From the IMG/VR virus record IMGVR_UViG_3300027770_000027, positions 124,001-188,000 of that record: DNA of 64,000 nucleotides. One strand, 5' to 3'. The notes below the pieces were generated by a model, which searched no databases, was not told the origin of the DNA, and was given only the letters and a program-made list of their open reading frames with translations. The translations under genes and the position numbers were made by a program. Positions 2,037 to 61,184 of the stretch are shown here, one piece after another (the first letter of the stretch is position 1; every line of letters starts with the position of its first letter).

Positions 2037-2112
2037 TTGTAATATTTATGGCAAAAGTCTTTTATGTAAACCTAGATTTTGTCAAACAGAGGTTATCACT
2101 GTTCATAATAAA

Positions 2113-5100
2113 TTAAACAACCGTATCTCCGGTAACAACCCAAGTATCTGTGGCTATTTTAATCAATGTAGCAGTAGCCCATTGGCTATTTAATCTAAAT
2201 TTGGAAGAGTTACTGCATAAAATTGTGGTTGCTGGTGTTGCTGCTACAATAGATACTGCATTGGTTCCAGTTTGGATCACCTTAATCTGAGAACCTATAG
2301 TAAATGCTACATTAGAGTTTGTAGGTACAATAGCAGATAGAACTCCAGATGTAGTATTCATTTGAATAGCTCCACCAGCATCCGTTATTGTAAGAGTATA
2401 ATTGGCTGTTCTGGGTGCGTCCATTGCTAATGGATTAGATCCGTATAACGTTGTTGCTCCGAAGGAGGTATCTCCTATATTATTTGGTTTTACACCATTG
2501 GGTGAAGGCCATATATAACCTAAATTCTCTACTCCTGTAAAATATTTTTTGTCGGAAGTACCTGCAACACCGCTCCAGTTTTTAGATAATCCAGAATATT
2601 TCCAGTTGGCTCCGTAGTCTGTAGAAACCAACAGAGGAGATCCACTGATAGCAACAACCACGGTGGAGTTATCTCCAGAAATATAAATAGATCCAGACCA
2701 TCCTACACCACTGGGGGCTGTGGACATTGCTGTAAAACTTGCTCCGTAGTCTGTGGATCTATAAAGAGCACCTCCGAAGACAGTGGCGTAAGCATAACTA
2801 CCGTCTTCAGAAATAGTGGCACCAGTAAAGTTTGCGGGTGGTCCGGTCTGTGCAAAAGTTGCACCGTAATCACTGGAAATCTTCATCAAACTTTGAGACG
2901 AGACTAATTGATACTTTCCGTTGGAAGACATAGAGGCACCGATCCAAACGGAGTTGGTACTTCCAGTCGGAGTTACAACAGTGACTCCACCATCACTTGA
3001 AGTATATATTTGAGTGTTGTCTCCAGCAGCTAGTACATATTGACCATCCTGAGAAGCAGCAACCCTCTGATAATTTAGAGATGGATACGTTGTTGTTGTA
3101 AATGTAACTCCATAATCTGTGGATTTATAAACTGATCCAAATCTACGAACTGTGTATTGAATTTTACCGTCATCACATACAACTACATTACCGTAGTTCA
3201 TGATGGTATTACCATTGGTGATGCTCCAGGTTGTTCCATAGTCTGCAGATCTCCATAAATTACCACCATAGATTCCAAACAGTTGATATTTGCCATCATT
3301 AGACATATCTCCTGGATTCCATCCCAGAGAAGATACTTTTGGGGTTGTTAATAAAGTAACTGGCAGAGAGGAGGAAACTCCCTTCACAGCCGGAAGATTC
3401 ACAAGGGAACTCCCATCACCCAAATGAACACCACTTAAACTATTAAAGGTGGCTCTATTACCGGATAAGGTTGGGGTATAAACACTATTGCCAACAACAA
3501 TTTTATTAAGAGTTAAATTACCTGTAGAATCTAAATAAGCCTTCGGAATGGTAATTTTCTTTGCGTTTCCTGCCCCATTATTAGTTTGGGCCCAAAAAAG
3601 AGTATCTGTAGAACTCCAATTTATATACGGGTTGCCATAAGAAAAAGAACCTCCAACCACAGACGGAATGTCTCTGACATATTGTAACGTACCATTGATT
3701 CCTCCAGGAGATTGTGGTCCTGGAGTTTTGTATAATTTATTAACATTATCTAATAGATAGATATAACCACTGGAGGAAGAACCTACAGAGCGGTCTATGG
3801 TAAAGTCTATAATTGTATTAGGTACAAATAAAAGAGGATTGTTAGGAGTTCCTATAGCATATAAAGAATTATAGGAAGTGCTCATAAGAGCGTATAAAGT
3901 GCTTGTAGAATCTGTATCTATAGATCCTATAATTTTATAATTAGCAGTCCCAGATAAAGTTACTACATATGTAGGAGATACTTTATAAACTGCTCCATAA
4001 GAGATGAGCGTGGTATCGGATGTGTAAACACTAGAATCCAAAGCATTGGCCATCATTGTCGGAGTGCCTATACGAGTGCCACTTGCAGCATTTGTCATGG
4101 TGCTGTCAGAAGTACGAAGTTTTTGGACTGTAAATGTGGTATTATTTATATAAAAAAGATTACCAGCATTATCTGCGGTTAAAGTGTGAGGCCCTCCCAG
4201 GGCTTGACAGTTCGCTACATTTACACTTGCTATTTGAACAGCATCAAGAATTGTTGGGTCATATTTCCAAACTGTGTACCCATTTAACATATAACCCCCG
4301 ATATAGTTTCCAGAAAGATCTGTACACGATCCATAGACATTTCCATAAGGAACGTTAAAATAAGTATCAGTTCCTATGCTCGGAGACAATCCCAATACAT
4401 TGATAAGATTTTTACCATCACCATAGTGAGTCCCGCTTAAAGAAGGGGCAGAAACTGATAAAGCAAATGTAGCACTTGCTGATAAAGCAATTGTAGCACT
4501 AGCAATAATACCAGTCAGTTTACTTCCATCTCCAAAATATGTTCCATAATGAACTCCACTTAAAGATGGAGCAGAAACAGAGGTAGTAAAGGTAGCAACT
4601 GCTGGTAATCTGCTGTTATTTAAAGTGCCTTGGCTGATATTGGTGGCATTTAAACCTGTCAAATTAGTACCATCACCACTTAAAGATGGAGCAGAAACAG
4701 AGGTAGTAAAAGTTGCAACTGCTGGTAATCTGCTGTTACTTAAAGTGCCTTGAGCAATATCAGCAGCATCTAAATTTGTTAAATTGCTACCATCACCATA
4801 AAAACCAAGAGTTGAACTAATATCCCCCACCACTGTTAGGGTTTTATTGGGAGCAGAAGTTTTAATACCCACATTTGGATATATAGAATTGACTCCTCCA
4901 ATGTGTAACACTTCTACATTTTGATCTATATCATAAAAAGAAGCAATGTCTGAGGGACCCTTTTGCCCTACATATAAAGCAGGCACTCCAGACACTGGAG
5001 AAACATTCACCACACTTAAAGAACTGGTGGTACTGAAAACCGTATTAACAAAGGTGGCAGACCCTCCAACTGTTAAAGTACCCACGGTTAGGTTATTATT

Positions 5101-5880
5101 AATAACTAAATTACCAGCAATAGTTCCTCCAGAAGCTGGTAATTTAGTAGTATCCGTGCCCCATACTTTAGTTAAATTGCTTCCGTCTCCATAATGAACT
5201 CCACTGACAGAGGGAGAAGAAATAGATGTAGTAAAGGTAGCAACTGCTGGTAATCTGCTGTTATTTAAAGTGCCTTGGCTGATATTGGTGGCATTTAAAC
5301 CTGTCAAATTAGTACCATCACCACTTAAAGATGGAGCAGAAACAGAGGTAGTAAAAGTTGCAACTGCTGGTAATCTGCTGTTACTTAAAGTTCCTTGGCT
5401 AATGTTGGTAGCGTTTAAACCCGTCAAATTAGCACCATCTCCGTAGACGTTACCAGCACTTAAAAATATTGCAGTTAGAGATGTTGCTGTTAAAGATCGA
5501 ACCACTAAAGTACCGTTGATAGTGCCGCCAGATAATGGAAGAGCTGCTGTGGTATTAACTCCAAACAATTTACTACCATCTCCATAAAAAGTACCACTCA
5601 AGGATGGAGCAGAAACAGATGAAGTGAAAGTAGCATTGGCTGGTGGAGTATATTGCGTAGTAATTACTCCAGTTAGACTACTGCCGTCTCCATAAATCTT
5701 GCCTCCGTTACCCGTCGCACACAAATTATTAACATAAAGTGTATTCGTAGTGGCTGTGGTGATATTATTTCCAATAACAAAAGAACCGCTTTGATTGGAT
5801 GTGCTGCCAGAGCCAGCCAATACGCCACTTAAGGCGGTGTCTAACATGCTAGGGATAAGTTTGGTAAGACTTTGACTCAT
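2113..5880 (-). CDS. Tail fibre / receptor-binding protein with 40-aa shaft repeats and BNR/Asp-box-like propeller
   Basis: GDGSxL and LNATNISQGTLxNSRLPAVATFTTS repeats, a NVGIKT fibre motif, repeated SxDYGxT(W/F) boxes and a fibre-type C-terminal domain. Confidence 0.8.
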   Translation of the reverse strand: MSQSLTKLIPSMLDTALSGVLAGSGSTSNQSGSFVIGNNITTATTNTLYVNNLCATGNGGKIYGDGSSLTGVITTQYTPPANATFTSSVSAPSLSGTFYGDGSKLFGVNTTAALPLSGGTINGTLVVRSLTATSLTAIFLSAGNVYGDGANLTGLNATNISQGTLSNSRLPAVATFTTSVSAPSLSGDGTNLTGLNATNISQGTLNNSRLPAVATFTTSISSPSVSGVHYGDGSNLTKVWGTDTTKLPASGGTIAGNLVINNNLTVGTLTVGGSATFVNTVFSTTSSLSVVNVSPVSGVPALYVGQKGPSDIASFYDIDQNVEVLHIGGVNSIYPNVGIKTSAPNKTLTVVGDISSTLGFYGDGSNLTNLDAADIAQGTLSNSRLPAVATFTTSVSAPSLSGDGTNLTGLNATNISQGTLNNSRLPAVATFTTSVSAPSLSGVHYGTYFGDGSKLTGIIASATIALSASATFALSVSAPSLSGTHYGDGKNLINVLGLSPSIGTDTYFNVPYGNVYGSCTDLSGNYIGGYMLNGYTVWKYDPTILDAVQIASVNVANCQALGGPHTLTADNAGNLFYINNTTFTVQKLRTSDSTMTNAASGTRIGTPTMMANALDSSVYTSDTTLISYGAVYKVSPTYVVTLSGTANYKIIGSIDTDSTSTLYALMSTSYNSLYAIGTPNNPLLFVPNTIIDFTIDRSVGSSSSGYIYLLDNVNKLYKTPGPQSPGGINGTLQYVRDIPSVVGGSFSYGNPYINWSSTDTLFWAQTNNGAGNAKKITIPKAYLDSTGNLTLNKIVVGNSVYTPTLSGNRATFNSLSGVHLGDGSSLVNLPAVKGVSSSLPVTLLTTPKVSSLGWNPGDMSNDGKYQLFGIYGGNLWRSADYGTTWSITNGNTIMNYGNVVVCDDGKIQYTVRRFGSVYKSTDYGVTFTTTTYPSLNYQRVAASQDGQYVLAAGDNTQIYTSSDGGVTVVTPTGSTNSVWIGASMSSNGKYQLVSSQSLMKISSDYGATFAQTGPPANFTGATISEDGSYAYATVFGGALYRSTDYGASFTAMSTAPSGVGWSGSIYISGDNSTVVVAISGSPLLVSTDYGANWKYSGLSKNWSGVAGTSDKKYFTGVENLGYIWPSPNGVKPNNIGDTSFGATTLYGSNPLAMDAPRTANYTLTITDAGGAIQMNTTSGVLSAIVPTNSNVAFTIGSQIKVIQTGTNAVSIVAATPATTILCSNSSKFRLNSQWATATLIKIATDTWVVTGDTVV
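4583..5391. repeat. Exact 164-bp direct duplication inside the fibre gene (4583-4746 = 5228-5391)
   Basis: Base-by-base comparison; offset 645 bp, in frame. Confidence 0.85.
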
Positions 5881-5886: not shown

Positions 5887-5894
5887 TATTTATA
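5887..5894 (-). promoter_or_regulatory. T4-type late promoter TATAAATA
   Basis: Perfect consensus 6 nt upstream of the ATG at 5880. Confidence 0.8.
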
Positions 5895-7337: not shown

Positions 7338-7346
7338 ATGTTATAT

Positions 7347-8696
7347 TTACCAAGAAATAGTTAATGTTGCAGACCCGTTTCCAGTAGTAATTTGTACTGG
7401 AATTGAAGATAATCCTTCTACATTGATTCCAGTATCGTAATTTAAACGAGGGCCTCCAGCAGTTCCAGAGCCTCCAGATCCTCCCGCTCCGCCAAGACCC
7501 AACACGAGAATGCCAGCGTTGCCAGCACCACCTCCGCCGCCTCCACCACCACCTCCGGGTCCAGAGGCAGGATCGTTTACGTAAAAGGCACCGGCGCCGC
7601 CTGCTCCTCCAGTTGAAACGTCAGAATTAACCCGGGCGCATCCTAACCCTCCAGTACCACCAGTACCACCGAGTCCGTTGCCAGTATCTGGGGTTGCATT
7701 TGGAGTTACATAAGGATCTGTTTGGCCAGCTCCTCCAAGTCCTCCAAGACCCTCACCATTACCCGCTAAACCGGGTCTACCATTATAAATTCCGCCACCG
7801 CCGCCGCCACCACCACCGAATCCTCCAAGACCTCCAGTGCCTCCCGGAAAAGTGTATTGACCCACTATTACAGATTTACCAGGATCCCCGTTAGCACCAT
7901 TGGCTCCATTAGCACCATCAGACCCGTCTGTTGGAAGACTAGATTCTGGATCTGTGTAACCATCAAGGCCGTTTTCTCCGTTGTGTCCTGGTTCTCCGGC
8001 GGCACCAACGCCAGTGTCTCCGTTTAATCTAAGCCATCTTACCCCAGATGGTATTATAAAATTAAAAGAAGTCACAGAATTAACAGTTGTAGAACCTCCG
8101 GAATTGTATGGAACTGAAGTTGTTTGATTTCTTGGCACCCATTCAGAAGTGGCAGAATTCCATTTCAAAACTTGTCTGTTCTGAGCAGAGTTGTTTGATA
8201 TACTTCTAGATTGGAGGAAAGAAGCAGATCCTCCACCGGGAGCACCTGTTAAAGTTCTTACAGAAATTTTCGCTCGAGCTGGTGGCGCAGTAGGAAAGGT
8301 GATGGTTCCTCTATTTGCTTCAGAAATAGTATAATCAGAAGCAGATTGTGTAATGCCTCCAACTGTGACTATATAAGACTGACTATCAATACCGTTGTAT
8401 CCACTAAGAGGAAAAAAACTAACTCTCACCCCAGTACCGTAAAATTCATTGGCATCTACTCCTCTTAAATTGGAAAAGTCTCTTGGCACTAAAACTATAT
8501 TAGTCAAACTAGTACCGTCTCCAAATATAGCTGAAGTAGCACTTACGGTGGTTGTAAAAAGGGTATTGGGTAATGTTGATGTTAAATTACTACCAATAGC
8601 AAAAGAACTCAGATGGGTAACATTACTGTTAGAACCACCTAAGACCCCACTATAGAGCGGATCAACCATCCCTAGACTGACTTTAGTAAGACTCAT
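7347..8696 (-). CDS. Glycine-rich fibre/adhesin protein (paralog 2)
   Basis: Same architecture as 5922-7337; ends IPVQITTGNGSATLTISW. Confidence 0.7.
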   Translation of the reverse strand: MSLTKVSLGMVDPLYSGVLGGSNSNVTHLSSFAIGSNLTSTLPNTLFTTTVSATSAIFGDGTSLTNIVLVPRDFSNLRGVDANEFYGTGVRVSFFPLSGYNGIDSQSYIVTVGGITQSASDYTISEANRGTITFPTAPPARAKISVRTLTGAPGGGSASFLQSRSISNNSAQNRQVLKWNSATSEWVPRNQTTSVPYNSGGSTTVNSVTSFNFIIPSGVRWLRLNGDTGVGAAGEPGHNGENGLDGYTDPESSLPTDGSDGANGANGANGDPGKSVIVGQYTFPGGTGGLGGFGGGGGGGGGIYNGRPGLAGNGEGLGGLGGAGQTDPYVTPNATPDTGNGLGGTGGTGGLGCARVNSDVSTGGAGGAGAFYVNDPASGPGGGGGGGGGGAGNAGILVLGLGGAGGSGGSGTAGGPRLNYDTGINVEGLSSIPVQITTGNGSATLTISW

Positions 8697-8712
8697 AATA
8701 TATATTTACAGA

Positions 8713-9531: not shown

Positions 9532-9543
9532 GTACAGTTATAT

Positions 9544-12500
9544 TTATTGATAATCCCACAGACGAATCAATCTTTCTACTCCGTGAATGGTTACTTTAAA
9601 GAAATCCCCGCTCGCGACTGTTGGAGTTGATATTGAATATGCGTCTTGGAAGTTGATAATGTCTGAAGAATATAAATCTACAATACCAGTTTTACCGTTT
9701 ATAGTAGATACAGTTGCTGGATATACTCCATAACTATATGTATAAACAATTATAGAAACGCCAGCATCTGGCACGGAAGTAAATTGAACAGATCCGCCGT
9801 TGTATAAACTTATAACATAATCTATATCCGGACGTTGAATAACATTTCCGACCAACACCAGATAATTTCTAGCATTTGTGCGAATTATTCCTCCAGGTGC
9901 TAAGGTGTAGAAGGAGTCTATCCCATTTGAGGTCCTGTTGGTTACTACTGGTGGTGGTATATTGAATCCGTGAAAATTTGTATACCACACGTTAACATTT
10001 GAAACCACTGGTCCAAAATCTGTAGAGGTGAATACTATGGATTTACCGCCGTCTCTAGTGATATTAAAGTCTATTCCGGGTTTTTGAACTACACCATTAA
10101 CAGTCACCAAATAATAGGAAGAATTTGTAGCATATTCTGGTGTAAGGCTAGTTGATAGATTGTACGAGGCGGACGCACTAGTTGCAGTAAAAGAGGTATA
10201 AGAGGTTCTTGGAGTATAACCATTTTCATACTGATTAGATCTTACTTGAACCACCGCACCAGTTGGTGGGGCTGAGTCAAATATTAAAAATCCTTGACCA
10301 TCCCCAGCAGATATAGAATAATTTGATGTCGGTGTTTGTACCACCCCATCAATAGCAATTAAATAATCGGAAGCAACGTCGCCTACAAAAGCGGTAACAG
10401 ATGGAGTATTAGTTAGTAAGAAGGAAGTGGTTGAACTGTCTCCATTAAATGTAGAAAAACTTGGACTTGCATAGTAAATATAAGCTGCTGGAGGTCCTAT
10501 AACAACTGGTACAGTGTTGGTAGGAATTTTAATGTTCTTAATCAACTCTATCACATCTATATTAGCACTCAATAGAGTGCCAGTTGTGTTGATGTTTTTG
10601 CCTTCTATGAAACTAGTTGCACAAAAGGATCTGGCAGTTAATGCTCCTTGACTGACAAAGTCATTAGTAACTGTTAAGTTGTTAGTAACTACAGAATTTG
10701 TTGCTCGGATGTCTGTGGCACTAATCAACGGACTGCTCACTCGTACAGAGCCGTATATTATATTACCTGTAATAGAATTTGCAGATAAAGTATTGCCCAC
10801 ACTTAAATCATCTCTTATTATTGCAGAAACTGTATTTATTGTGCTAGTAATATTGGCATAAGTCCCTTGAACTAAAGAACCAGCACATATATCTCGAGCA
10901 CAAACAAATGTAGTAGAATATATATTATAGCCACTTAAACTTTGTGTTGCTTTGATGTTTGTACCACCACAAATATCTCCAACAGAACATATTACATTAC
11001 CCGATTTAATTAAATTAGAGGCATATATAACATTGTCTGATACTAAACAATCCGTAACACAAGCACTTGGTGATTTTACTAAAGATCTACCACAGATAGT
11101 ATTGCCACAAATAGTATTGTATGTATATAGGTTGTTGCTTACGATTAAACAATCAGTAACACAAGCACTTGGAGCTTTTACTAAAGATCTACCACAAACG
11201 ATATCGCCACAAATAGTGTTTGTGGCGCATATACTTCCACCAGTATTAATGGTGTTGCTAGCGTATATAACATTGTCTGATACTAAACGATCAGTAACAC
11301 AAGCACTTGGGGATTTTACCAAAGTTCTGCCACAAACGATATCGCCACAGATAGTGTTTGTGGCACATATGCTCCCACCTGTATTAATGGTGTTGCTAGC
11401 ATATATGCAATTAGAAGATCCTAGATAATCTGTAACACAAGCACTTGGTGATTTTACTAAAGTTCTGCCACAGATAGTATTACCACAGATGGTGTTTGTT
11501 GTGTATATATTATTGTCTACGATTAAACAATCTGTAACACAAGCACTTGGTGATTTTACTAAAGTCCTGCCGCAGATAGTATTACCGCAAATAGTGTTTG
11601 TTGTATAAATGTTATTATCTACAATTAAACAATCTGTAACACAAGCACTTGGTGATTTTACTAAAGATCTACCACAGATAGTATTACCACAGATGGTGTT
11701 TGTGGCACATATGTTGTTGCTAGAACTTATACAATCTGTAGCTGATACGCTGATGGAAAACATTCCATTAACAGCACATATGTTATTTGCAGAACTTAAA
11801 TTGTTAACAAATGTGTGATTGTGGCACACTGCATTTAAGTTAGATCCTAAAATGAAAACATTATTAAAGATTTTAGAATCATTGTCAAATCCACCGGCAA
11901 TGAAAGAATTATCAGAAGAGGATTTATTACCACTACCCGCTCCTATAAATGTGTAGTTACCAGATGAAGTATTCTTTAAACCACTTCCTATAAAGGATTG
12001 AATACCAGAGGCAACTCCACTGATACCGTTGACAATTGTAGAGAAACAATTAGAAGCATTGTTATACTGTCCAGCCCCTACAATTGAATTAGCACTTAAT
12101 ACTGTGTTATTAGTACCACCAGCTATGATAGAATTACTTCCACATACAACATTAGATTCACCTGCTAAGATGGCATTTGAATTGTTATATGTTTTATTTA
12201 ATTGGCCGGCTCCAATTAAATTATAAGAACCCGCTGCAATATTTGAATTACCCGCAATTATGGAAGAGTAATCTGCAGAGGATTGATTGCTACTACCTGC
12301 AGCAACAAACGTATAATGGCCAGAAATTGTATTTTTAACTCCACCAGCAAGAACACTACAATTACCAGACACATTTCCACTCAAACCACCGACAATAGAA
12401 GAATGTGATCCAGAAACAATATTACGTTCTCCAGCCCCTATAAAAGTTTGAACTGCTGCGGATGAGTTGTTAAGACCCGAACTGATTACAGAATTGGCAC

Positions 12501-16095: not shown

Positions 16096-16104
16096 TGTTA
16101 ATAT

Positions 16105-16998
16105 TTATTCCAAGACCAGGTATTTCTGATAGACATGTTTACTATCTCCAAATTTAGTAACATCTGCCTTAATATATCGTAGATTATAAGCAGGATCTGT
16201 CTTGTCTGTTGCAACTGTTAAGATGTGATAAGGTAGTGGCGTAAACGGATCATAAGGAAACACAGCACAATTTTCTTCATCTAAATCCATATACGGTAAA
16301 TGAAGAGACACTTCTGTGATGTGAAATTGATCCTGTTTACCTGCATTTCCAGGGGATATATTAAAACTCATTATACCAAATTCTAATATTTCATTTTTTA
16401 ATAAGAAAGAAATATTAAATAATCTAGTAGTTTCATTAAATGTAATGACAGGGTCTTCTAGAGTTACATTAAAATTGCTCCAATTTGAAGTTCCTTCGGG
16501 TCTCATTATTAAACGAACTCTATCAAATAATACAGTTTGAACAGTTGCCAGATTCGTATCAAAAACATTTAAATGGATGGTAAAACTGAAACGGCTAATA
16601 GAATTTTTGTTTTCATCCATTGGAGCTACATAAGCATAGTATATTTTGTTTTCATCTTCCTGTAGCCAATAACAACAACGAGTCGAGAATCCTGCATAGT
16701 TTTGGCGTTTTGGAATAATTGGAGTGTAAAAATTATATAAACTAAAAGGAGTTATGCCCCTGTCATCTAAATTAAGTTTTTCAAAGAAATATCCAGCAGG
16801 TGTTTCTACAAAAATGGTATCATAAAAGACGTCAAATCTAGTAACATTATTAGTAGACAAATGATTATAAAATGTTGGATATGCTGTTGCATATTTCATA
16901 TAAACTGCTGACAAGGCAATTGTTGCTGGAACCCTATTGCCTTCTGTGTCTCTAAACCAAAGCTCTCCCCCTTCAAGGGTTTTATTATATAAATTCAT
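16105..16998 (-). CDS. Hypothetical protein (tail/baseplate region)
   Basis: 297-aa ORF tightly packed in the structural operon. Confidence 0.6.
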   Translation of the reverse strand: MNLYNKTLEGGELWFRDTEGNRVPATIALSAVYMKYATAYPTFYNHLSTNNVTRFDVFYDTIFVETPAGYFFEKLNLDDRGITPFSLYNFYTPIIPKRQNYAGFSTRCCYWLQEDENKIYYAYVAPMDENKNSISRFSFTIHLNVFDTNLATVQTVLFDRVRLIMRPEGTSNWSNFNVTLEDPVITFNETTRLFNISFLLKNEILEFGIMSFNISPGNAGKQDQFHITEVSLHLPYMDLDEENCAVFPYDPFTPLPYHILTVATDKTDPAYNLRYIKADVTKFGDSKHVYQKYLVLE

Positions 16999-38679: not shown

Positions 38680-39381
38680 TTATCGTGCTGAAGGTCCCTC
38701 TAATGTTTTAAGAGCATTGATAAAAGCGATTACCTGTTCTTTTAAATAATTTTTTGTTTCTTTGGTTGGAAGAGATGCTATTTTTCGTTCAAACCCTTCG
38801 TAGGCAGGAACAAATTCTCCAGAAGACTCTAATACCCATTGTTTGGCTTCTAAAATGCCGTTTACAAATGCTGTAGGAACAGAAGGATCTGCTACAATAT
38901 CTACAGCCATAATTTTAAAATCTGCAACAGTACTAACTCCATTTTTTTCTGCTACTAATTTACCCAAAGACCTACTAGAAACTCCCAACTTAGCACCATG
39001 TAAAATAAACCCACGAACTAAATTACCTAGTGGCATACCTTCACCGTATAAAATTTTACTCTTTCCTTCAAAAATGTTACCGTTTTGTTTTAAATCGGTT
39101 ACAAGATGACAAGCTCTTTCTAAATTAATTTCCGGAGACTGTGGATGATTTAATTCTCCATAAGCTCTATGATTAGAAATCATTTCAGATTTATATCGGT
39201 CTACTTCTTTGACCATTTCATCTAAGGGATAAATTCTTTTATTTTTATTGGCTTCGTTTGCCATAAGAAAAGGCCCTTGAATAAACATGCTGGAAGGAGA
39301 ATTGCGGTTTTTTTCTTCCACCAAATATTTGACTTCATATGTTGGTTCTTCCACTAGTAAACGGTAAACGTTGTCGCTCAT
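38680..39381 (-). CDS. gp21: Prohead protease (gp21-like)
   Basis: NKNKRIYP, GELNHP, GVSSRSLG, DIVADPS. Confidence 0.95.
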   Translation of the reverse strand: MSDNVYRLLVEEPTYEVKYLVEEKNRNSPSSMFIQGPFLMANEANKNKRIYPLDEMVKEVDRYKSEMISNHRAYGELNHPQSPEINLERACHLVTDLKQNGNIFEGKSKILYGEGMPLGNLVRGFILHGAKLGVSSRSLGKLVAEKNGVSTVADFKIMAVDIVADPSVPTAFVNGILEAKQWVLESSGEFVPAYEGFERKIASLPTKETKNYLKEQVIAFINALKTLEGPSAR

Positions 39382-39433
39382 ATTTGATATTGTTAAATAT
39401 TTATACTTAAAGGGTGTCCTATCAACAATTTGC

Positions 39434-41364: not shown

Positions 41365-41374
41365 AATGTACTAC

Positions 41375-43249
41375 TTATCCAGTAGGAGCGGCTTCTGGGG
41401 CTGGTGGCGGGGCTTCTCCGCCTTCTGGAGCAACGGCGCCGCCTTCTGGAGCAACGGCGCCGCCTTCTGGAGATACTTCTGCTCCACCTCCACCAAATTC
41501 TGGTATAGCACTACCTCCACCCCCACCCCCACCTTCAGCACCGGCACCACCTTCAGCTCCACCAGCTGCAGATGCTGCTGCTTGAGCTGCTTCAATTTGT
41601 TCTCTCCAGTTAGGACCTGCGTTGGTAATTTGCTGCAATTCCCATTTAAATGCAGCTTCCTTACGTTGCCATTCCATGTTTTCACTAATTTTAGTATCAC
41701 TAAATCCTAGATAGTGTCGTTGAGCAAATATATTAGATATTCCTTCATTTTGAGACATATCTGCAAAATTCTTTTGTTTTAATTCTTGCATCTGTTGTTG
41801 ACGAATCGCAAAGTAATTTGATGGTGGATTAAATGAAAGGTTTATAAATGACTCGTGAAGTTTGTATTCATTCCACCAGCCCTTAATTTTTAAATGGGTT
41901 ATAAAGGCAGCTTTAAGACCAAATGCAAATTGATTTTGCAAACGCATTATAAATTTAGCAAATCTTAATTCTTCTCGAAGAATTTCTGAACCGTCTTTAA
42001 ATGCTTCATTGGGGTTGAGTCTAGTTAGAGGCACTTTCAAGCTCTTGTAAAGTTTGTTTACAAAATACATCAAATCATCTAACTTTCCTAGGTTGTCGCC
42101 TCCTTGGAGCACAGACACATCTGATCCAGTCTCACCGGTACGTTTTGCAAACCAATAACTATCTAACATTGATTGTGGGTTATAAGAATTTACAACAGAT
42201 CCACCGTTATTTGACCCATCATATACCTGTTTAGACCAATATTGCTGCTTCAATTGCTGCATATATGCTTGGGCCTTAGCGGGAGGCATATTACCCACGT
42301 CAATTACAAATTTTAAACGTTCTGGTGCTCTAACTAAACGATAAATGATGATTGCATCCTCTAGTAAAGATAAAAGTTTATAAGCACGACGACAATTTTC
42401 AATAAAAGGAATTCTAACAGTTAAATCCTCATTCCAGAGACCAGAATTTATATAGGTAATTTGATTACCCTGCAAAGTCATTAATTGTTGCTGAAGATTG
42501 TTTCCGGGACTAACATTGTTAGTTTGTTGAGATAATGGTCCAGATGGATTATTGTTTAAATTAATAGGTTTAGAAAAAACAAAATTTTCTATAACATTAT
42601 TTTGTATATTATCATATACAGGACTTATAGTCTCTGCTGGTATGTTAAGACATCCAATAATTCCATAATCGGTTTTGTCTTTATAAGTGATATTTTCGAA
42701 GAAAACCTCACCTTCTACCAATAAATGTCTGCAATATCCCCATCCTTTGTGTTCTAAATCATAGATATTAATGAACTTTTCAAATTCTTTCTGCAATTCT
42801 GCCTTGGCTTCAGATTCTATGTCACAAAATGCAGAAAATGCTAAATGAATAATTTTACCATTTTCATCTTTAACAATAAATTCATCACAAATTTCATCCA
42901 AACAATCTGATACTTCAGAAAAAGCGGCCATTCTGCGATATTCTGCTAATCTTCTGATCTTATCTGTATCTACTTGTGCATAGATATAATTGTGATAAGG
43001 GCTGTGTGATCCAAAAGCAGCACTGCCTGTGGGTCCATACTCCATACCCATAGCGGGTCCGGTGATTACCGACTGCTTTAATAAGCGAAAATCTGTGCGT
43101 TTGGCTAACCTATCAAAAAGTTCATACTTGGGGTTGCCCGCAGAAACATCTAATCCAGCGGCTACATACGGCAAACGTTGTAAAACACTTGAAATAAAAT
43201 TGCGTCCTACATTTTGTCCGCGGCTTGAAGTTGGTAAAAGATCTGCCAT
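41375..43249 (-). CDS. gp20: Portal protein (gp20-like)
   Basis: YRRMA, LEDAIIIYRLVRAPER, DVGNMP, KLYKSLKVP, EILREELRF. Confidence 0.97.
   Translation of the reverse strand: MADLLPTSSRGQNVGRNFISSVLQRLPYVAAGLDVSAGNPKYELFDRLAKRTDFRLLKQSVITGPAMGMEYGPTGSAAFGSHSPYHNYIYAQVDTDKIRRLAEYRRMAAFSEVSDCLDEICDEFIVKDENGKIIHLAFSAFCDIESEAKAELQKEFEKFINIYDLEHKGWGYCRHLLVEGEVFFENITYKDKTDYGIIGCLNIPAETISPVYDNIQNNVIENFVFSKPINLNNNPSGPLSQQTNNVSPGNNLQQQLMTLQGNQITYINSGLWNEDLTVRIPFIENCRRAYKLLSLLEDAIIIYRLVRAPERLKFVIDVGNMPPAKAQAYMQQLKQQYWSKQVYDGSNNGGSVVNSYNPQSMLDSYWFAKRTGETGSDVSVLQGGDNLGKLDDLMYFVNKLYKSLKVPLTRLNPNEAFKDGSEILREELRFAKFIMRLQNQFAFGLKAAFITHLKIKGWWNEYKLHESFINLSFNPPSNYFAIRQQQMQELKQKNFADMSQNEGISNIFAQRHYLGFSDTKISENMEWQRKEAAFKWELQQITNAGPNWREQIEAAQAAASAAGGAEGGAGAEGGGGGGGSAIPEFGGGGAEVSPEGGAVAPEGGAVAPEGGEAPPPAPEAAPTG
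41418..41472. repeat. 21-bp tandem repeat (about 2.6 copies) in the portal low-complexity tail
   Basis: ccgccttctggagcaacggcg unit, encoding PEGGAVA. Confidence 0.85.
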
Positions 43250-44598: not shown

Positions 44599-44610
44599 AC
44601 TCTAGAATAT

Positions 44611-45858
44611 TTAGTTCCAAACTAGAGTATTTCCGAATTCATCGACTATGTTTGCGTTGTCTTCTGTTAAAATAGATATTCCCAAATAATTTATAGGAAT
44701 CCCATTTACCACCGGAGAGGGTTCATATACCCAACCACTCCAAGAACTAATAGCGGGTCTCAGGCTACAAGTAGATAATTTGCCGTATCCGGCTTCATTT
44801 TCAACAATAATATCTATATATCCAAAATTAAGTGGTATTTGAGGTAGACTAAACTGTAGATGTTCATCCGTAATGGGGTTAAAACTAGAAAGCCTAACTG
44901 CATTAAATGGAGGATTGAATGAAGAAAGCTTGGGATATGCTGAAAATAAATCCCATGTCTGAATATTATCAAACATGGATGGATCACTTGCACTTAAATA
45001 TACATTACGTGGCTGAAATAAATATTTTCCATAAACGTCTAAGAAAACAGCAGACACTGGAAGAGTTGGAATAAGTGCATCATTATAATAAAGACAAGAT
45101 GGATATACAACTTTTGGATGAGGAATTGCTGATATAGATCGGGTATCAGTTTCTAAGGTTTTTAATAAACGGTCTCCTTCTCTGATATCCCCCAAAGCGG
45201 TAAAATCTGTGTTTATATAGTAGATTTTTTTATAAGGTTCATCAAATTTCTTAAAAATCCATCCCTTTATAGTAAAAGAGGTGTCTGCAGACAATTTAAA
45301 AGGAGCTCCAGCTGCTAATTCTTGTGGGTATGTGGGTGTTATGGTGCCGGACCAAGTAACTTCTGAGCGAATTTCAAACGGAGTGTCAGATTCTTTAAGA
45401 CCTGGAAATTTCCAAGAAATTACTACATATGGATCATTATATGGAATGATGTTAGATATAATCTGGTCCATATCTTCCTGATATTTTGCTATAATAGTCA
45501 TATTAACAGCAATGTTAACTGGAAGAGGTTGTGGTATTTTCTTTAAAAATATTTCCGGCACTTCTGGAGTGTTGAAAGGTATCATAAACCCTTCATTTTT
45601 ATTAAAAACCCTAGATTTGTCCCTAGTGATACTAGCAATGGATACAGCAATTGCTGGAACAGTGGGAGCACCTGGTCCTGGGGTGTTTAAAGTTTCAAAC
45701 ACACGCTGTTTAGGAGCATATACAAATGAAACTTTGGTGTCTGATGAAAGAATTTCATTATGATCTTTATCATACCTCTTGATAACAATGTCATTAAAAG
45801 CAGCTATGAACTGCTCTAGCATGGTCATTACTTCAAAATTGTATGTATAGTTCCTCAT
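44611..45858 (-). CDS. gp15: Tail sheath stabiliser / terminator (gp15-like) with C-terminal extension
   Basis: FNDIVIKR, YAPKQR, DMDQIISNIIPY, FTIKGW. Confidence 0.85.
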   Translation of the reverse strand: MRNYTYNFEVMTMLEQFIAAFNDIVIKRYDKDHNEILSSDTKVSFVYAPKQRVFETLNTPGPGAPTVPAIAVSIASITRDKSRVFNKNEGFMIPFNTPEVPEIFLKKIPQPLPVNIAVNMTIIAKYQEDMDQIISNIIPYNDPYVVISWKFPGLKESDTPFEIRSEVTWSGTITPTYPQELAAGAPFKLSADTSFTIKGWIFKKFDEPYKKIYYINTDFTALGDIREGDRLLKTLETDTRSISAIPHPKVVYPSCLYYNDALIPTLPVSAVFLDVYGKYLFQPRNVYLSASDPSMFDNIQTWDLFSAYPKLSSFNPPFNAVRLSSFNPITDEHLQFSLPQIPLNFGYIDIIVENEAGYGKLSTCSLRPAISSWSGWVYEPSPVVNGIPINYLGISILTEDNANIVDEFGNTLVWN

Positions 45859-45878
45859 CAGACAAGTATTTATGGTAT

Positions 45879-47549
45879 TTACATAAATCGTTCTAGAAAA
45901 TACTTAGGAAGATATTTTTTATTAGTAGTTATCGCTTTTACAGCAGCTCCATCTAAAATATAAGTCACTGCATGATCTTCTTTTGATCGAGTACACCTTC
46001 CACTCATTTGAATAAGACTGTCTAACATCTTCATACCATAATAATGAGGATTTTTGTCAAATTGTTTTTTAATTCTTTTAGAACCTAGCGGTAGATAAGG
46101 AGCTTTGATAATAATTTGAAACCTTCCCAAGTCATCATCTAAACTAACTCCAGTGTCTAACGAAGGGCTTACCAGAATAGTATCTTCTTCTATTCTTTTT
46201 TTATGAATTGCAATAATATCTTCATTACTTGAACCCACTTCTCTAAATAAAAATCTTAAATTTTGTCTCGTCTTTTGTTTTAACTTTTCTGTGATACTGT
46301 TGGTATGGGTATGAATTAGTCCCTTTTCTCCTTTATGCATTTCACATATCTTCAAAGCCATGTCAATTACCTTAGGAAGAGTTGATTCTATGGTTTTAAA
46401 TGACAGACTATACTTGCTTGAAACGTATATAGGAGACTTAGAAGAAGGAAAGGTTGAATCTATATCTATAAATGAATATTCATTATTTGAGATACCCAAA
46501 CTCTTTGCATATTCTTCTACATTACTAATAGTAGCCGACATCATGAGAATATGGTTAGCATTTCCGAAAATAGTCTGTGCTAATGGTTTAATGTCGTAAG
46601 GCACAAAAGTTACTTCTTTGTTATCCTTATACTCCACAAGATATTGACACTCTTGCCAGTTTAGAACGGCGTCCATGATTGAATTATACAAACTAGTGAG
46701 TTTACCCAAGCGCTGTTGCTGTTTAAAAAGTAAACTGTCAAACCCACTTCCTTTGTTTGATATCAAAGTTAACTTGTGTCTCAATTCTTGCATCTGTTCT
46801 TTGACTTGCAGAAATATATCTTGCAACCACATTCCGGCTTCCTCCGCATCGTCTGAAATAATTTTCTTGAATACAATTTCTTCTGCTGTTAATTGAGCAT
46901 AGTTTAATGTAATTGAATACTGCCCTACAATTTCACTTTCAATCTTGTCTGCTTCATCAAAGATTAAATATTGGCGTTTCATCAAAAATGTCGGCATATT
47001 AAAATACGCTCGATAATTTAAGACTGGATCTGAAGACATCAATGCATTTTTGCGGATCTTATAATAAGGACATCTATCTTCTGCAAAACATTCTTGTTTT
47101 AATTTAGGACTAAACAAACAAGGAGCAAAATCAACAGTAACGTTAGGATCCACTGCACAAGTGTAATTATTTTTACCCTTGGGTGCAATTTGATCTGTAA
47201 ACAATTCTGTATACTGATTTTGTAATGATTTTGTGACTGTTAAAATTGCGGACCCGTATGATGATTCTGATAGGAAAGTTTCTTTGTGTAAGTAATTTCC
47301 TTGATTATCTTTTTTAAAAGCTTCATACGATTCTAACAATCGCTGTCTATTAGAATCAATACCTCTTGATGATCTTGCCAATGTAGTTGCTATGTGTGAT
47401 TTGCCAGATCCTGTAGGAAGTCTGGCTATTACATATTTTTTACCGCTTTGAAACTCTTTTTGAATAAATTTAAGAGCTTCTATTTGTTGTGGTCGTGGAC
47501 TATCTTGTCCAGGGAAATAATCAATTACGTTTTGTGTATTTGTCTTCAA
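45879..47549 (-). CDS. DinG/XPD-family helicase (probable Fe-S cluster)
   Basis: PRPQQ, PTGSGKS, four-Cys segment ending CPYY, DEAD, SAT, QMSGRCTRS. Confidence 0.9.
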   Translation of the reverse strand: MKTNTQNVIDYFPGQDSPRPQQIEALKFIQKEFQSGKKYVIARLPTGSGKSHIATTLARSSRGIDSNRQRLLESYEAFKKDNQGNYLHKETFLSESSYGSAILTVTKSLQNQYTELFTDQIAPKGKNNYTCAVDPNVTVDFAPCLFSPKLKQECFAEDRCPYYKIRKNALMSSDPVLNYRAYFNMPTFLMKRQYLIFDEADKIESEIVGQYSITLNYAQLTAEEIVFKKIISDDAEEAGMWLQDIFLQVKEQMQELRHKLTLISNKGSGFDSLLFKQQQRLGKLTSLYNSIMDAVLNWQECQYLVEYKDNKEVTFVPYDIKPLAQTIFGNANHILMMSATISNVEEYAKSLGISNNEYSFIDIDSTFPSSKSPIYVSSKYSLSFKTIESTLPKVIDMALKICEMHKGEKGLIHTHTNSITEKLKQKTRQNLRFLFREVGSSNEDIIAIHKKRIEEDTILVSPSLDTGVSLDDDLGRFQIIIKAPYLPLGSKRIKKQFDKNPHYYGMKMLDSLIQMSGRCTRSKEDHAVTYILDGAAVKAITTNKKYLPKYFLERFM

Positions 47550-48905: not shown

Positions 48906-49301
48906 TTATTTAAGTGATTTGTTTAATTGTTCAAGTGTTGAATTATAGAGATTAATTTCTCTTTGAGATAATTCCATGTTATTAGCAATAATATTTGCAT
49001 CCGAATCTTCTTCTTTTGATTTAGAAGAAGCTTTTTTAATGTAAGATAATTTACAACTTATTTTAGGCAAAAGAGTTTTGTAAAATTTACCAGCCAAAAA
49101 ATTTTCTTTAGACAATGGAGTTTTATACACCCATCTATTAAAAGTAACATTTACTATTTGAGCTAAAGAATTATCTGCCATAGATAACCATCTATTGGTA
49201 ATAAAAATAGATGGTATACTATGTTCTTCTGGGATCTTAGAAGACTTCTTAAGAATCCAATTTAAATAAGGAAACAGATCATCTTTATATTGAGGTTTCA
49301 T
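48906..49301 (-). CDS. Probable clamp-loader small subunit (gp62-like)
   Basis: LFPYLNWI...FITNRWLS...FYKTLLPK...YIKK pattern; TAATG overlap with the upstream stop. Confidence 0.6.
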   Translation of the reverse strand: MKPQYKDDLFPYLNWILKKSSKIPEEHSIPSIFITNRWLSMADNSLAQIVNVTFNRWVYKTPLSKENFLAGKFYKTLLPKISCKLSYIKKASSKSKEEDSDANIIANNMELSQREINLYNSTLEQLNKSLK

Positions 49302-51983: not shown

Positions 51984-52001
51984 ATGGTAAATATAGTATA
52001 A

Positions 52002-53533: not shown

Positions 53534-53553
53534 ATAAGCAGTATATAGGAATT

Positions 53554-54633: not shown

Positions 54634-54642
54634 ATATCTTAT

Positions 54643-55281
54643 TTATGGTGTCCAAATGTCAGATATCAAACTTTGTTCTTCACCAAATTGTTTACCATTC
54701 TCCTGTACGTACATGGTTGTTAATGCAATTCGCTGTTCTCTGGTACCAAAAATTTCAATAAAAGCAGCTGAATCTCCTTTTGGAAAAATTCTTCCATCCC
54801 CTTGCAAATAAGACTGATTAAAAACTTTAAAAATGTTATCAATTTCTTCTCGGTACACAGGATCTGTATCTCTAATACCATCTGCAACAATTTCAACTGG
54901 AGAAGCTTTGGTTAGTGGTAGAAAAAAAAGTATATCATATAGTCTCAATGTTTCTCTCACGAGGATTCTAGAAGTATCTAAGAACTTTTCAGACACCAAG
55001 CCATTCAAATGAAGCCAAGAAGAGTATGCTAGATTGTCTAGTACACACCGATCAAAAATTACAAAATCATTTTTACTATACTGAGTGGCTTGTTCTGCTA
55101 AAAAATCTAAAATTTGTCTTTGTGATTCTTCAGAGCCTTCTTTGTTGAGAGGGATATTGTTTTCCTTAACAAGATCTCTGTAAGTCTTCTCTGGAGTTTT
55201 ATACATCGGCCATTTTGCTAGAAAATCTTGAATGTATGTAGATTTACCAACACATTGGGTTCCTATTACAGCTATTTTCAT
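54643..55281 (-). CDS. P-loop nucleotide kinase (AAA_28-like), second copy
   Basis: GTQCVGKST, DRCVLDNLAYS, DGIR. Confidence 0.8.
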   Translation of the reverse strand: MKIAVIGTQCVGKSTYIQDFLAKWPMYKTPEKTYRDLVKENNIPLNKEGSEESQRQILDFLAEQATQYSKNDFVIFDRCVLDNLAYSSWLHLNGLVSEKFLDTSRILVRETLRLYDILFFLPLTKASPVEIVADGIRDTDPVYREEIDNIFKVFNQSYLQGDGRIFPKGDSAAFIEIFGTREQRIALTTMYVQENGKQFGEEQSLISDIWTP

Positions 55282-56294: not shown

Positions 56295-56305
56295 AATTCT
56301 ATTTA

Positions 56306-58941: not shown

Positions 58942-58947
58942 TATTTA
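58942..58947 (-). promoter_or_regulatory. Late-promoter motif TAAATA before the DUF1501 pair
   Basis: Overlaps the upstream stop codon; 5 nt before the ATG. Confidence 0.6.
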
Positions 58948-59220: not shown

Positions 59221-59221
59221 G

Positions 59222-60579: not shown

Positions 60580-61105
60580 TATCCAACATAATAGCCTCAG
60601 CCAAAGATTCTTCAACTATTTCTGGTGGAAGATTTTTATAAGCTTCTTCAACTATTTTGTTGAATTCTTTAAATTGTAAGGCAAACTTCATCTTATAATC
60701 ATGAGCATTTATAAGATCTTGTTTGGAAAGTTTAGAATATATAGAGGTTTCTTGTAAGCTTAAAGCTTCTAACAAAGGTTCTGCTATTGAATATAATATA
60801 GAAGCCACTCTATTATATAGTCTATCCAATGGAGATTTATAAGTTTCCATTAATGGTTTCTTTTTAAGTTTGTTGAAAAAATAATTTAAAACCACCGCTT
60901 TTTCTGTTTGAACATTACCTCTATTTAAAAATTCTCCACCACTGATGTGGTTTTTATTATAAGGATTATATACACAACCACTGCCAACTGCATCTGTTCC
61001 GCAATACATACACCCCTTGCCACCGATGTGAGCATGTGTGTTGGTAGGGGAAAACAAACAAGGCTGGCCAAAAGATTGTGATTGGCAGTAAATGCATCTA
61101 CTCAT
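60569..61105 (-). CDS. Hypothetical protein with two CxYC...C...H motifs
   Basis: CIYC..C..H and CMYC..C..H; TAAATA 5 nt upstream. Confidence 0.65.
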   Translation of the reverse strand: MSRCIYCQSQSFGQPCLFSPTNTHAHIGGKGCMYCGTDAVGSGCVYNPYNKNHISGGEFLNRGNVQTEKAVVLNYFFNKLKKKPLMETYKSPLDRLYNRVASILYSIAEPLLEALSLQETSIYSKLSKQDLINAHDYKMKFALQFKEFNKIVEEAYKNLPPEIVEESLAEAIMLDNEH

Positions 61106-61184
61106 ATTGTTATTTAGGGGATTTTAAAAACAATGCCATAAAAATGTTTCAAGAGTGTAAATATAGAAGAACATTTTATCTTCT

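What the first reader, a model, noticed from the sequence alone, without database searches (positions are those of the whole stretch)
2043..61116. Stop codon doubles as late promoter, with near-leaderless start codons throughout
Seen: TAAATA (or TAAGTA) lies 4-12 nt before the ATG of at least 18 genes. Spacers are 6 nt at 2036, 5880, 7337, 8696, 16095 and 54633; 5 nt at 56294, 58936 and 61105; 4 nt at 34822; 7-9 nt at 9531, 26064, 31821, 41364, 44598, 45858 and 52002; 12 nt at 38664. At 7347, 9544, 16105, 38680, 41375, 44611, 45879, 54643 and 58945 its TAA is the upstream stop codon. Shine-Dalgarno motifs are mostly absent, and the motif is missing before primase, QueC, dUTPase and gp44. Known: TATAAATA is the T4 gp55 late -10 element, with initiation a few nt downstream. 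Inference: most late genes have their own promoter and are translated from leaderless or near-leaderless mRNA, unlike T4.
Basis: partly seen in the sequence, partly recalled or inferred. Interest (0 to 1): 0.7.

Follow-up and report, generated by a model that had tools for sequence, protein, structure and literature searches.

The report
Late promoters abutting phage start codons
In this uncultured freshwater T4-like phage the late-promoter box TAA(A/G)TA, and also ordinary sigma-70-type -10 boxes, sit 5-6 bases before the ATG of about a third of all genes. Transcripts should therefore begin at the start codon (leaderless mRNA), a layout absent from T4 and cyanophages but shared with the SAR11 phage HTVC008M; no transcript 5' end has been mapped.

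Summary
All 18 sites and all 9 stop-codon overlaps check out. Genome-wide (227 kb), 57 of 289 genes carry TAA[AG]TA ending 4-9 nt before the start, against 6±2.4 expected. TAAATA and TAAGTA are the two most enriched hexamers there, and Shine-Dalgarno motifs are not enriched.

The motif behaves as a T4-type late promoter:
- A gp55 homologue is encoded.
- The motif marks virion genes and not replication genes (p=0.001).
- In 46 related contigs it is kept before orthologous genes while its distance to the ATG drifts from 5 to 18 nt.

T4's box spans -13 to -6, so a 5-nt spacer puts +1 on the A of ATG.

New here:
- About 57 further genes have a sigma-70-type -10 box (TAAGAT/TATAAT), often with a TTG..TTCCCC upstream partner, at exactly the leaderless distance.
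- By the same method T4, P-SSM2 and Syn9 have the box 20-28 nt upstream.
- Pelagibacter phage HTVC008M has it at 5 nt without SD, or at 18-30 nt with SD.

Leaderless starts remain an inference from geometry. The only RNA data are unstranded metatranscriptome contigs with no 5'-end resolution. The host is unknown. Verdict: a new variant of a known kind, and moderately interesting.

The parts
2043..2048 (-). TAAATA, 6 nt before ATG 2036 (large virion-type ORF running off the window)
5887..5892 (-). TATAAATA-type late box, 6 nt before ATG 5880 (1255 aa, minor tail protein)
7344..7349 (-). TAAATA, 6 nt before ATG 7337; its TAA is the stop codon of ORF 7347-8696
8703..8708 (-). TAAATA, 6 nt before ATG 8696
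9541..9546 (-). TAAATA, 9 nt before ATG 9531; its TAA is the stop of ORF 9544-16095
16102..16107 (-). TAAATA, 6 nt before ATG 16095 (2183 aa); its TAA is the stop of ORF 16105-16998
26074..26079 (-). TAAGTA, 9 nt before ATG 26064 (1932 aa)
34827..34836 (-). Overlapping TAAGTA and TAAATA, 8 and 4 nt before ATG 34822, directly after a small hairpin plus T7 run (34846-34859)
35900..35929 (-). Sigma-70-like unit TTGATTTCCC..N..GATAAT, 5-6 nt before ATG 35894 (thymidylate kinase-like), directly after the MCP terminator
35935..35965 (-). Intrinsic terminator (13-bp stem plus T8) after the major head gene; the abundant RNA contig ends just before it
38438..38443 (-). TAAGTA, 19 nt before the scaffold ATG 38418 (leadered, no SD)
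38677..38682 (-). TAAATA, 12 nt before ATG 38664 (75-aa basic protein); its TAA is the stop of the protease gene; in relatives the same box lies 5-14 nt upstream
39398..39409 (-). Tandem TAAGTA and TAAATA, 22 and 16 nt before the prohead protease ATG 39381; box kept in all 33 relatives scored, at 5-18 nt
41372..41377 (-). TAAGTA, 7 nt before ATG 41364; its TAA is the stop of the portal gene
44608..44613 (-). TAAATA, 9 nt before ATG 44598; its TAA is the stop of the gp3-like gene
45867..45881 (-). Two TAAATA boxes, 8 and 17 nt before ATG 45858 (gp3-like tail sheath stabilizer); the distal TAA is the stop of helicase ORF 45879-47549
48907..48912 (-).
51988..51993 (+). TAAATA, 8 nt before ATG 52002 on the + strand
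53540..53545 (-). TATACT (-10-like), 6 nt before the primase ATG 53533: an early-type gene at the leaderless distance without the late box
54640..54645 (-). TAAATA, 6 nt before ATG 54633; its TAA is the stop of ORF 54643-55281
56300..56305 (-). TAAATA, 5 nt before ATG 56294
58942..58947 (-). TAAATA, 5 nt before ATG 58936 (DUF1501 protein); its TAA is the stop of ORF 58945-59220
61111..61116 (-). TAAATA, 5 nt before ATG 61105, at a divergent junction
61158..61163 (+). TAAATA, 21 nt before ATG 61185 (tail fibre, + strand): a leadered late promoter

Best explanation
TAA(A/G)TA is the -10 box of late promoters read by host RNA polymerase carrying the phage's gp55-type sigma factor. In this phage, and in its large clade of uncultured freshwater T4-like phages, selection has pushed the box to 5-6 nt from the ATG. 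With T4 geometry (box at -13..-6) transcription then starts on the A of AUG or 1 nt before it. The mRNAs are therefore leaderless or nearly so, need no Shine-Dalgarno sequence, and in tight gene strings reuse the upstream gene's TAA stop as the first three bases of the box.

Early and middle genes follow the same plan with sigma-70-type promoters (TTGnnn, TTCCCC, about 11 nt, TAAGAT/TATAAT, 6 nt, ATG). The remaining genes, about two thirds, are internal cistrons translated by coupling (ATGA or TAAnATG overlaps) or by SD-independent initiation.

Shown: motif, spacing, statistics, conservation, functional bias, the gp55 gene, and the contrast with T4 and cyanophages. Inferred: the position of +1, and translation from a 5'-terminal AUG.
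For: Statistics and spacing. A gp55 homologue lies at genome 192358-192987 in the order UvsY-UvsW-gp55-gp47.

Functional bias: the motif lies within 30 nt upstream of 10 of 16 PHROG-annotated virion genes and 3 of 25 DNA-metabolism or auxiliary genes (Fisher p=0.0014).

Promoter, not ribosome-binding site:
- In 46 related loci the box is kept before the orthologous protease, 75-aa and scaffold genes, while its distance to the ATG varies from 5 to 18 nt and the flanks diverge.
- It occurs at divergent junctions and directly after terminators.
- No position upstream of the box is conserved, and the 5 nt after it are A/T-rich, as in T4.

Position of +1:
- T4's box is at -13..-6.
- In the 22 leadered copies (spacer 10-30) the 6th base after the box is A in 14 (p=0.002).
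- In the 105 genes with leaderless geometry the base before the ATG is a pyrimidine in 96, and the start codon is ATG in 104.

Second promoter class at the same distance: TANNNT peaks at spacer 6 (38 genes against about 5-10 background), and TTCCC lies exactly 29 nt upstream of the ATG in 16 genes.

Comparators by the same method: T4 21-28 nt with SD, P-SSM2 21-25 nt, Syn9 20-27 nt. HTVC008M is bimodal: 5 nt without SD, or 18-30 nt with GGAG.

Precedent for mostly leaderless phage transcripts: Thermus phages phiYS40 and Lalka27a.
Against: - No transcript 5' end was observed. The lake metatranscriptome run is held only as unstranded contigs. One 4895-nt contig (depth 416 against 3-15 nearby) spans the gp4-to-gp23 genes, and its 5' end (40864) lies inside an ORF rather than at a predicted promoter.
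- Many motif genes sit 9-12 nt behind the previous gene with no room for a terminator, so read-through mRNAs must also exist and be translated internally.
- The most highly expressed late gene (major head protein) has no late box at its ATG and must be translated from within a polycistronic RNA without SD.
- The start point of this gp55 homologue (28% identical to T4's) is assumed, not measured.
- Neither T4 gp45 nor the HTVC008M clamp found a match, and gp33 was not searched.
- Several class-2 promoters are duplicated cassettes and so are not independent counts.
Confidence: 0.6

Rival explanations
1. The box is a late promoter, but translation does not depend on leaderless mRNAs. Most protein comes from long read-through polycistronic transcripts by SD-independent internal initiation and coupling. 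The 5-6 nt spacing is then mainly genome compaction: the promoter is squeezed into minimal intergenic gaps and shares the TAA stop.
For: Intergenic gaps are minimal. 13 of 58 boxes share the upstream stop codon. The major head, portal, gp4 and gp6 genes have no box of their own yet must be well expressed. An RNA contig runs uninterrupted across several boxes. SD-less internal initiation clearly works in this system.
Against: Compaction alone does not explain the same exact spacing at divergent junctions and after terminators, where space is free (61105, 31821, 35894). It does not explain the sigma-70-type boxes peaking at exactly 6 nt. It does not explain the either/or pattern in HTVC008M, 5 nt without SD or 18-30 nt with SD. 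The cyanophages are equally compact but keep 20-27 nt leaders.
Confidence: 0.2
2. TAA(A/G)TA at a fixed distance is chiefly a translation-initiation signal: a non-SD ribosome-binding or unstructured A/U element in a host that makes little use of SD. It would not be a promoter.
For: The sharp peak relative to the start codon resembles a ribosome-binding site. SD is absent and the region is A/U-rich.
Against: Orthologous boxes drift between 5 and 18 nt from the ATG in relatives. Box copies with long spacers (up to 30 nt) precede first genes of units. The core is identical to the T4-family late box and a gp55 gene is present. The motif is absent from replication genes, which also need translation. 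A second, different motif class with a -35-like partner occupies the same position.
Confidence: 0.12
3. The pattern comes from chance, AT bias or stop codons.
For: The genome is 36% GC, and TAA stops are common just upstream of starts.
Against: Enrichment is 55- to 75-fold over genome frequency, with z of about 20 against Markov and shuffle controls. The reversed and reverse-complement motifs show no such peak. Spacer 5 is out of frame. After TAA stops at gaps of 5-12 nt the next triplet is ATA or GTA in 13 of 37 cases.
Confidence: 0.02

Closest known systems
Bacteriophage T4 late promoters (TATAAATA read by gp55-RNA polymerase, activated by gp33 and the gp45 clamp)
   Same: Same core box (TAAATA). 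No -35 element. AT-rich segment downstream of the box. A gp55 homologue is encoded. The box lies before virion genes on either strand.
   Different: - In T4 the box ends 21-28 nt before the ATG, with an SD in the leader (30 of 53 genes). Here it ends 5-6 nt before the ATG and there is no SD.
- Only the 6-bp core is conserved, and TAAGTA is a frequent variant.
- gp45 was not found with the queries used.
Late promoters of T4-like cyanomyoviruses (P-SSM2, Syn9)
   Same: gp55 is present. Box of the NATAAATA type. SD is weak or absent. The UvsY-UvsW-gp55-gp47 gene order is the same.
   Different: The box lies 20-27 nt before the ATG, so there are short leaders and no copy at 5-6 nt in the 50-kb stretches examined. 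The major capsid protein is only about 35% identical.
Pelagibacter phage HTVC008M (T4-like pelagimyophage)
   Same: ATAAATAG lies exactly 5 nt before the annotated ATG of 10 genes (gp4, gp48, gp25, gp2, gp29-like and others) with no SD. This is the same layout.
   Different: HTVC008M also uses SD widely (49 of 115 genes) and has leadered late promoters with GGAG. It is a different lineage and size (147 kb, marine). The papers I could search do not report the layout. One states that late-promoter prediction 'was unsuccessful in PMP genomes'.
Thermus phages phiYS40 and Lalka27a, with mostly leaderless transcripts
   Same: Phage promoters are placed so that the A or G of the initiator codon is the transcript's 5' end. 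phiYS40 is reported to shift host IF2/IF3 levels in favour of leaderless translation.
   Different: These phages are unrelated and do not use gp55. Their hosts belong to a phylum where leaderless mRNAs are common. In those phages the 5' ends were mapped; here they were not.
Promoter-early stem-loop cassettes of T4-type phages (own knowledge, not tested)
   Same: Repeated terminator-promoter units precede small early genes in a variable region.
   Different: Here the cassette ends 6 nt before an ATGATG start and carries a conserved TTCCCC element between the -35 and -10 positions.

Membership tests
T4-type gp55-dependent late transcription | Phage-encoded gp55 late sigma factor | tested here: met
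   Genome 192358-192987 (+). E 7.5e-12 against T4 gp55 and 3.3e-18 against HTVC008M gp55. 25 invariant core columns in a 4-way alignment.
T4-type gp55-dependent late transcription | TATAAATA-like box before late genes, without a -35 element and with an AT-rich segment downstream | tested here: met
   The core TAA[A/G]TA was fixed by the search pattern itself. Upstream positions carry at most 0.2 bit. The 5 nt downstream are about 80-90% A/T. The first two bases of the T4 octamer are not conserved.
T4-type gp55-dependent late transcription | Association with late (virion) genes rather than replication genes | tested here: met
   10 of 16 virion genes against 3 of 25 DNA-metabolism or auxiliary genes, Fisher p=0.0014.
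T4-type gp55-dependent late transcription | gp45 sliding clamp as activator | tested here: inconclusive
   No match with T4 gp45, HTVC008M gp45, PF02916 or PF09116. The clamp loader gp44 is present, so a diverged clamp is likely.
T4-type gp55-dependent late transcription | gp33 co-activator | not tested
   The protein is small and poorly conserved. No search was run.
T4-type gp55-dependent late transcription | Transcription starts 6 nt after the last A of the box | not testable with these tools
   Only indirect support: A at that position in 14 of 22 leadered copies.
Leaderless mRNA | Primary 5' end on the first base of the start codon | tested here: inconclusive
   The RNA run is available only as unstranded contigs, with no 5'-end pile-ups.
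Leaderless mRNA | -10 element about 6-7 nt upstream of the start codon | tested here: met
   The late box peaks at 5-6 nt. The sigma-70-type TANNNT peaks at 6 nt.
Leaderless mRNA | No Shine-Dalgarno sequence, an AUG start, and pyrimidine/purine at -1/+1 | tested here: met
   0 of 67 genes with SD. ATG in 104 of 105. Pyrimidine at -1 in 96 of 105.

The most novel reading that the evidence does not exclude
A large clade of uncultured freshwater T4-like phages (at least 598 IMG/VR contigs with a related capsid gene), together with the cultured SAR11 phage HTVC008M, would express a third or more of their genes, early and late, as truly leaderless mRNAs. The gp55 holoenzyme would start on the A of AUG. 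This would be the first such case in the T4 superfamily and a possible means of favouring phage over host translation. It could be tested directly in the HTVC008M / Pelagibacter culture system.
Probability: 0.5. Interest if true: 0.7.

Novelty: new variant of a known kind. Interest (0 to 1): 0.6.

Why it matters
T4 late transcription is a textbook system, and leaderless translation is usually tied to Actinobacteria, Deinococcus-Thermus and archaea. The layout found here fuses the T4-family late promoter directly to the start codon. It is repeated with sigma-70-type promoters, conserved across a large uncultured freshwater clade, and present in a SAR11 phage.

If confirmed, it would have four consequences:
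- It would show a different solution to gene expression in streamlined aquatic phage genomes.
- It would explain why standard late-promoter searches failed in pelagimyophages.
- It would improve start-codon and operon annotation of such phages, since box plus 5-6 nt predicts the true ATG.
- It would raise the question of how their hosts' ribosomes handle 5'-terminal AUGs.

If the 5' ends turn out not to be there, what remains is an unusually compact promoter and stop-codon arrangement.

Tried and rejected
1. RNA evidence. One lake metatranscriptome run holds 91-96% of the region, but only as Logan contigs.
   - It shows that the head module (35970-40864) is 30-100 times more abundant than its neighbours and ends at the predicted terminator. 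The DNA run is flat at 27.9.
   - It gives no strand and no 5' ends, and the contig crosses the divergent junction at 31821/31858. It is therefore not usable as a TSS test.
2. Host. All leads were inconclusive and the host is left unknown.
   - There is no close cultured relative (best capsid identity 35%).
   - No WhiB gene was found and no bS21 gene.
   - Capsid relatives are binned in MAGs of three unrelated taxa.
   - The two DUF1501 genes reach 55-56% identity in some Verrucomicrobiota.
   - 400 kb from three such genomes (59-63% GC) gave no usable signal with a crude start caller: flat SD and a tiny TANNNT bump at 6 nt.
3. gp45 was not found with four queries.
4. The 75-aa ORF between the protease and scaffold genes was considered as a phage bS21. 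It is a lysine-rich protein with no S21 match.
5. The generic sigma-70 consensus scan is not enriched over shuffles. The class-2 promoters were found only through position relative to the ATG.
6. A frame artefact was considered, in which the TAA defines the ORF border. It was rejected because the out-of-frame spacer 5 is as frequent as spacer 6 here, and more frequent in relatives.
7. Rhodothermus phage RM378 shows no TAAATA signal at all.
8. Literature searches found no description of leaderless late genes in T4-like phages. Absence from the searched library is not proof.

Full report
**What the window is.** The window is bases 124001-188000 of a 227,352-bp IMG/VR virus record with 36% GC.
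- PHROG and Pfam scans identify a T4-type virion module: portal gp20, gp4, prohead protease gp21, scaffold, major head protein gp23, gp3, gp25, gp6 and tail fibres.
- They also identify replication genes: clamp loader gp44, primase, helicase, dUTPase, thymidylate kinase and QueC.
- Elsewhere the genome encodes terminase, tail sheath, RNR, DNA polymerase gp43, gp41, gp46, gp47, UvsX, UvsY, UvsW and QueD/E.
- The capsid protein is at most 35% identical to any phage in the reference collection, and cyanomyoviruses score best.
- At least 598 IMG/VR contigs, many apparently from lake metagenomes, encode a related capsid protein; the 80 loci kept are 63-90% identical. It is therefore a member of a large, uncultured, apparently freshwater clade of distant T4-like myoviruses. 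The host is unknown.

- Every one of the 18 sites is as described. All nine stop-codon overlaps are correct; the one at 45879 works through the distal of two tandem boxes.
- I called 290 ORFs without reference to the motif. TAA[AG]TA ends 4-9 nt before the start of 57 of the 289 genes that have a full 60-nt upstream region, against 6.1±2.4 in first-order Markov simulations of the same upstream regions (maximum 13 in 300).
- TAAATA and TAAGTA are the two most over-represented hexamers just upstream of starts. At spacers 5-7 they occur 34 times against 0.62 expected, and 12 times against 0.16. The reversed and reverse-complement words show no such peak.
- Of all 405 copies in the genome, an ATG follows at spacer 5 or 6 in 55. 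Nearly all of these are gene starts.
- Spacer 5 is out of frame with the TAA, so this is not an artefact of ORF definition.
- Shine-Dalgarno words are not enriched anywhere: 0 of 67 motif genes, and 7 of 222 others against 8 in a control window.

**It is a promoter of the T4 late type.**
- A gp55 homologue lies in the T4/cyanophage-like order UvsY-UvsW-gp55-gp47.
- The box precedes 10 of 16 annotated virion genes but only 3 of 25 DNA-metabolism or auxiliary genes (p=0.0014). It is absent before primase, QueC, dUTPase, gp44, gp43, gp41, gp46, UvsX and gp55 itself.
- Nothing upstream of the hexamer is conserved, and the five bases after it are A/T-rich. This matches the description of T4 late promoters.
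- The comparison with relatives is decisive against a ribosome-binding-site reading. In 46 related loci the overall peak is again at 5 nt (70 genes) and 6 nt (47 genes) among 737 genes. Before orthologous protease, 75-aa and scaffold genes, however, the box is retained while its distance to the ATG ranges from 5 to 18 nt and the flanking sequence diverges.
- Boxes also stand at divergent junctions (31821, 61105, 52002) and immediately after terminator-like hairpins (34822), where no read-through can supply RNA.

**Why leaderless is the likely consequence.**
- The T4 octamer occupies -13 to -6 (the review's wording 'A(-13) in place of T'). Five bases therefore separate the box from +1.
- A 5-nt spacer (19 genes) puts +1 on the A of ATG. 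A 6-nt spacer (18 genes) puts it one base earlier.
- Independent hints agree. In the 22 copies with long spacers, the sixth base after the box is A in 14 (p=0.002). In the 105 genes with leaderless geometry, the base before the ATG is a pyrimidine in 96 and the start codon is ATG in 104.

**A second promoter class has the same geometry.**
- Among genes without the late box, TANNNT peaks sharply at spacer 6: 38 genes against a background of about 5-10.
- Twenty-six genes carry TTCCC 28-37 nt upstream of the ATG, 16 of them at exactly 29 nt. The unit reads TTGnnn-TTCCCC-about 11 nt-TAAGAT/TAATAT/TATAAT-6 nt-ATG, which is a -35/17-bp/-10 arrangement whose +1 falls on the A of ATG.
- These units precede small early-type genes, many in a GC-rich island of repeated cassettes. 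They also precede gp41 and a thymidylate-kinase-like gene directly after the capsid-gene terminator (35894).
- Together the two classes cover 105 of 289 genes. The remaining genes are tightly coupled to the gene before them, with overlaps of -4, -1 or +1.

**Comparators analysed with the same script.**
- T4: the box ends 21-28 nt before the ATG, and 30 of 53 genes have an SD.
- P-SSM2: 21-25 nt. Syn9: 20-27 nt. Neither has a copy at 5-6 nt.
- RM378: no signal.
- Pelagibacter phage HTVC008M shares the layout. ATAAATAG lies exactly 5 nt before ten annotated starts without SD. Six other genes have the box 18-30 nt upstream with GGAG in between. This either/or pattern is what a mix of leaderless and leadered promoters predicts.
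- The pelagimyophage literature I could search does not describe this. One study reports that late-promoter prediction failed in these genomes, and another lists 15 late promoters without comment on spacing.
- Mostly leaderless phage transcription is established for Thermus phages phiYS40 and Lalka27a.

**RNA data.**
- One lake metatranscriptome run holds the region.
- Its assembled contigs show a 4895-nt piece of depth 416 covering the genes from gp4 to gp23. It ends 14 nt after the capsid stop codon, just before a 13-bp terminator hairpin. Neighbouring regions have depth 3-15, and a DNA run is flat at 27.9.
- The phage was therefore transcribing its late head genes in the lake. Contigs are unstranded and give no 5' ends, so the central inference remains untested.
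- The 5' end of the abundant contig (40864) lies inside ORF 40165-41364 and is unexplained.

**Limits.**
- Gene calls are crude, and small genes in the GC-rich island are under-called.
- Class-2 cassettes are partly duplicates.
- The start point of this diverged gp55 is assumed from T4.
- Neither T4 gp45 nor the HTVC008M clamp found a match, and gp33 was not searched.
- The capsid gene itself lacks a box at its ATG and, unlike in several relatives, lacks an SD. SD-independent internal initiation must therefore also be efficient, which leaves room for the rival view that leaderless transcripts contribute little to protein output.

**Verdict.** The promoter assignment is well supported. Leaderless initiation is the most economical reading but is unproven. 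This is a new variant of two known things, T4-type late promoters and leaderless phage mRNAs. It is shared by a large uncultured clade and by one cultured SAR11 phage, in which it can be tested.

Noticed in passing
genome 39411-39835 (-), outside the window (locus L082:412-836): The phage encodes a one-piece tmRNA (Rfam RF00023, 132.6 bits). ARAGORN reads an unusually long 33-residue tag ending in ...YELAA. There are also 14 tRNA genes in two clusters (50.8-51.1 kb and 93.8-96.5 kb).
   Followed up: partly
genome 60-65 kb and about 70 kb (L084:4000-10000): A GC-rich island (50-55% against 36%) is packed with small minus-strand ORFs. Each sits behind a near-identical cassette, cTTGcgGTTCCCC-N11-TAAGATATATAC-ATGATG. 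The conserved TTCCCC lies where T4 middle promoters carry the MotA box, so it may be a factor-binding site.
   Followed up: partly
window 56306-57670 and 57677-58936 (-): Two paralogous DUF1501 (sulfatase-like) genes match Pfam at E 1e-134 and 1e-111. The second has a late box 5 nt before its ATG. The best cellular matches among sampled Verrucomicrobiota are 55-56% identical, a weak hint at a host in the PVC superphylum (Planctomycetota-Verrucomicrobiota-Chlamydiota).
   Followed up: partly
locus L095/L097 (Pelagibacter phage HTVC008M, NC_020484): ATAAATAG lies exactly 5 nt before 10 annotated start codons without SD, and 18-30 nt before 6 others with GGAG in the leader. The papers searched do not appear to report this.
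   Followed up: partly
window 40864 (-), inside ORF 40165-41364: The highly abundant metatranscriptome contig (depth 416) begins here, in the middle of an Ig-like-domain gene, while upstream depth is about 6-11. A variant box GTAAATGTATATG lies 30-45 nt upstream. This could be an internal promoter, a processing site or an assembly break.
   Followed up: no
genome about 194-206 kb (+ strand): A block of about 13 consecutive genes of 230-340 aa has 25-30% GC. It includes glycosyltransferase and nucleotide-sugar transferase families, with overlapping starts and neither promoter class.
   Followed up: no
window 51243-52037 and 50600-51277; genome 208311-209063 and 216281-216742: QueC, QueD, QueE and an amidotransferase-like gene are present. 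This suggests a 7-deazaguanine DNA modification pathway.
   Followed up: no
genome 192358-192987 (+) (L083:6359-6988): The gp55 homologue has an N-terminal extension of roughly 60 residues with a strongly acidic stretch that T4, HTVC008M and P-SSM2 gp55 lack. It shows no obvious C-terminal hydrophobic clamp-binding motif.
   Followed up: partly
loci L006-L008, L022, L025, L037, L045 (upstream of the capsid gene): Several relatives have a clear GGAG/AGGAG Shine-Dalgarno sequence before the major head gene, whereas this phage has only GAAA there. Hosts of the clade can therefore use SD, and its absence here is a choice of layout rather than an inability.
   Followed up: no
window 38437-38664 (-): A 75-aa protein between the protease and scaffold genes has a lysine-rich C-terminal half. 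It is conserved in relatives and always preceded by a late box. It is not ribosomal protein S21, and is possibly an internal head or DNA-binding protein.
   Followed up: partly
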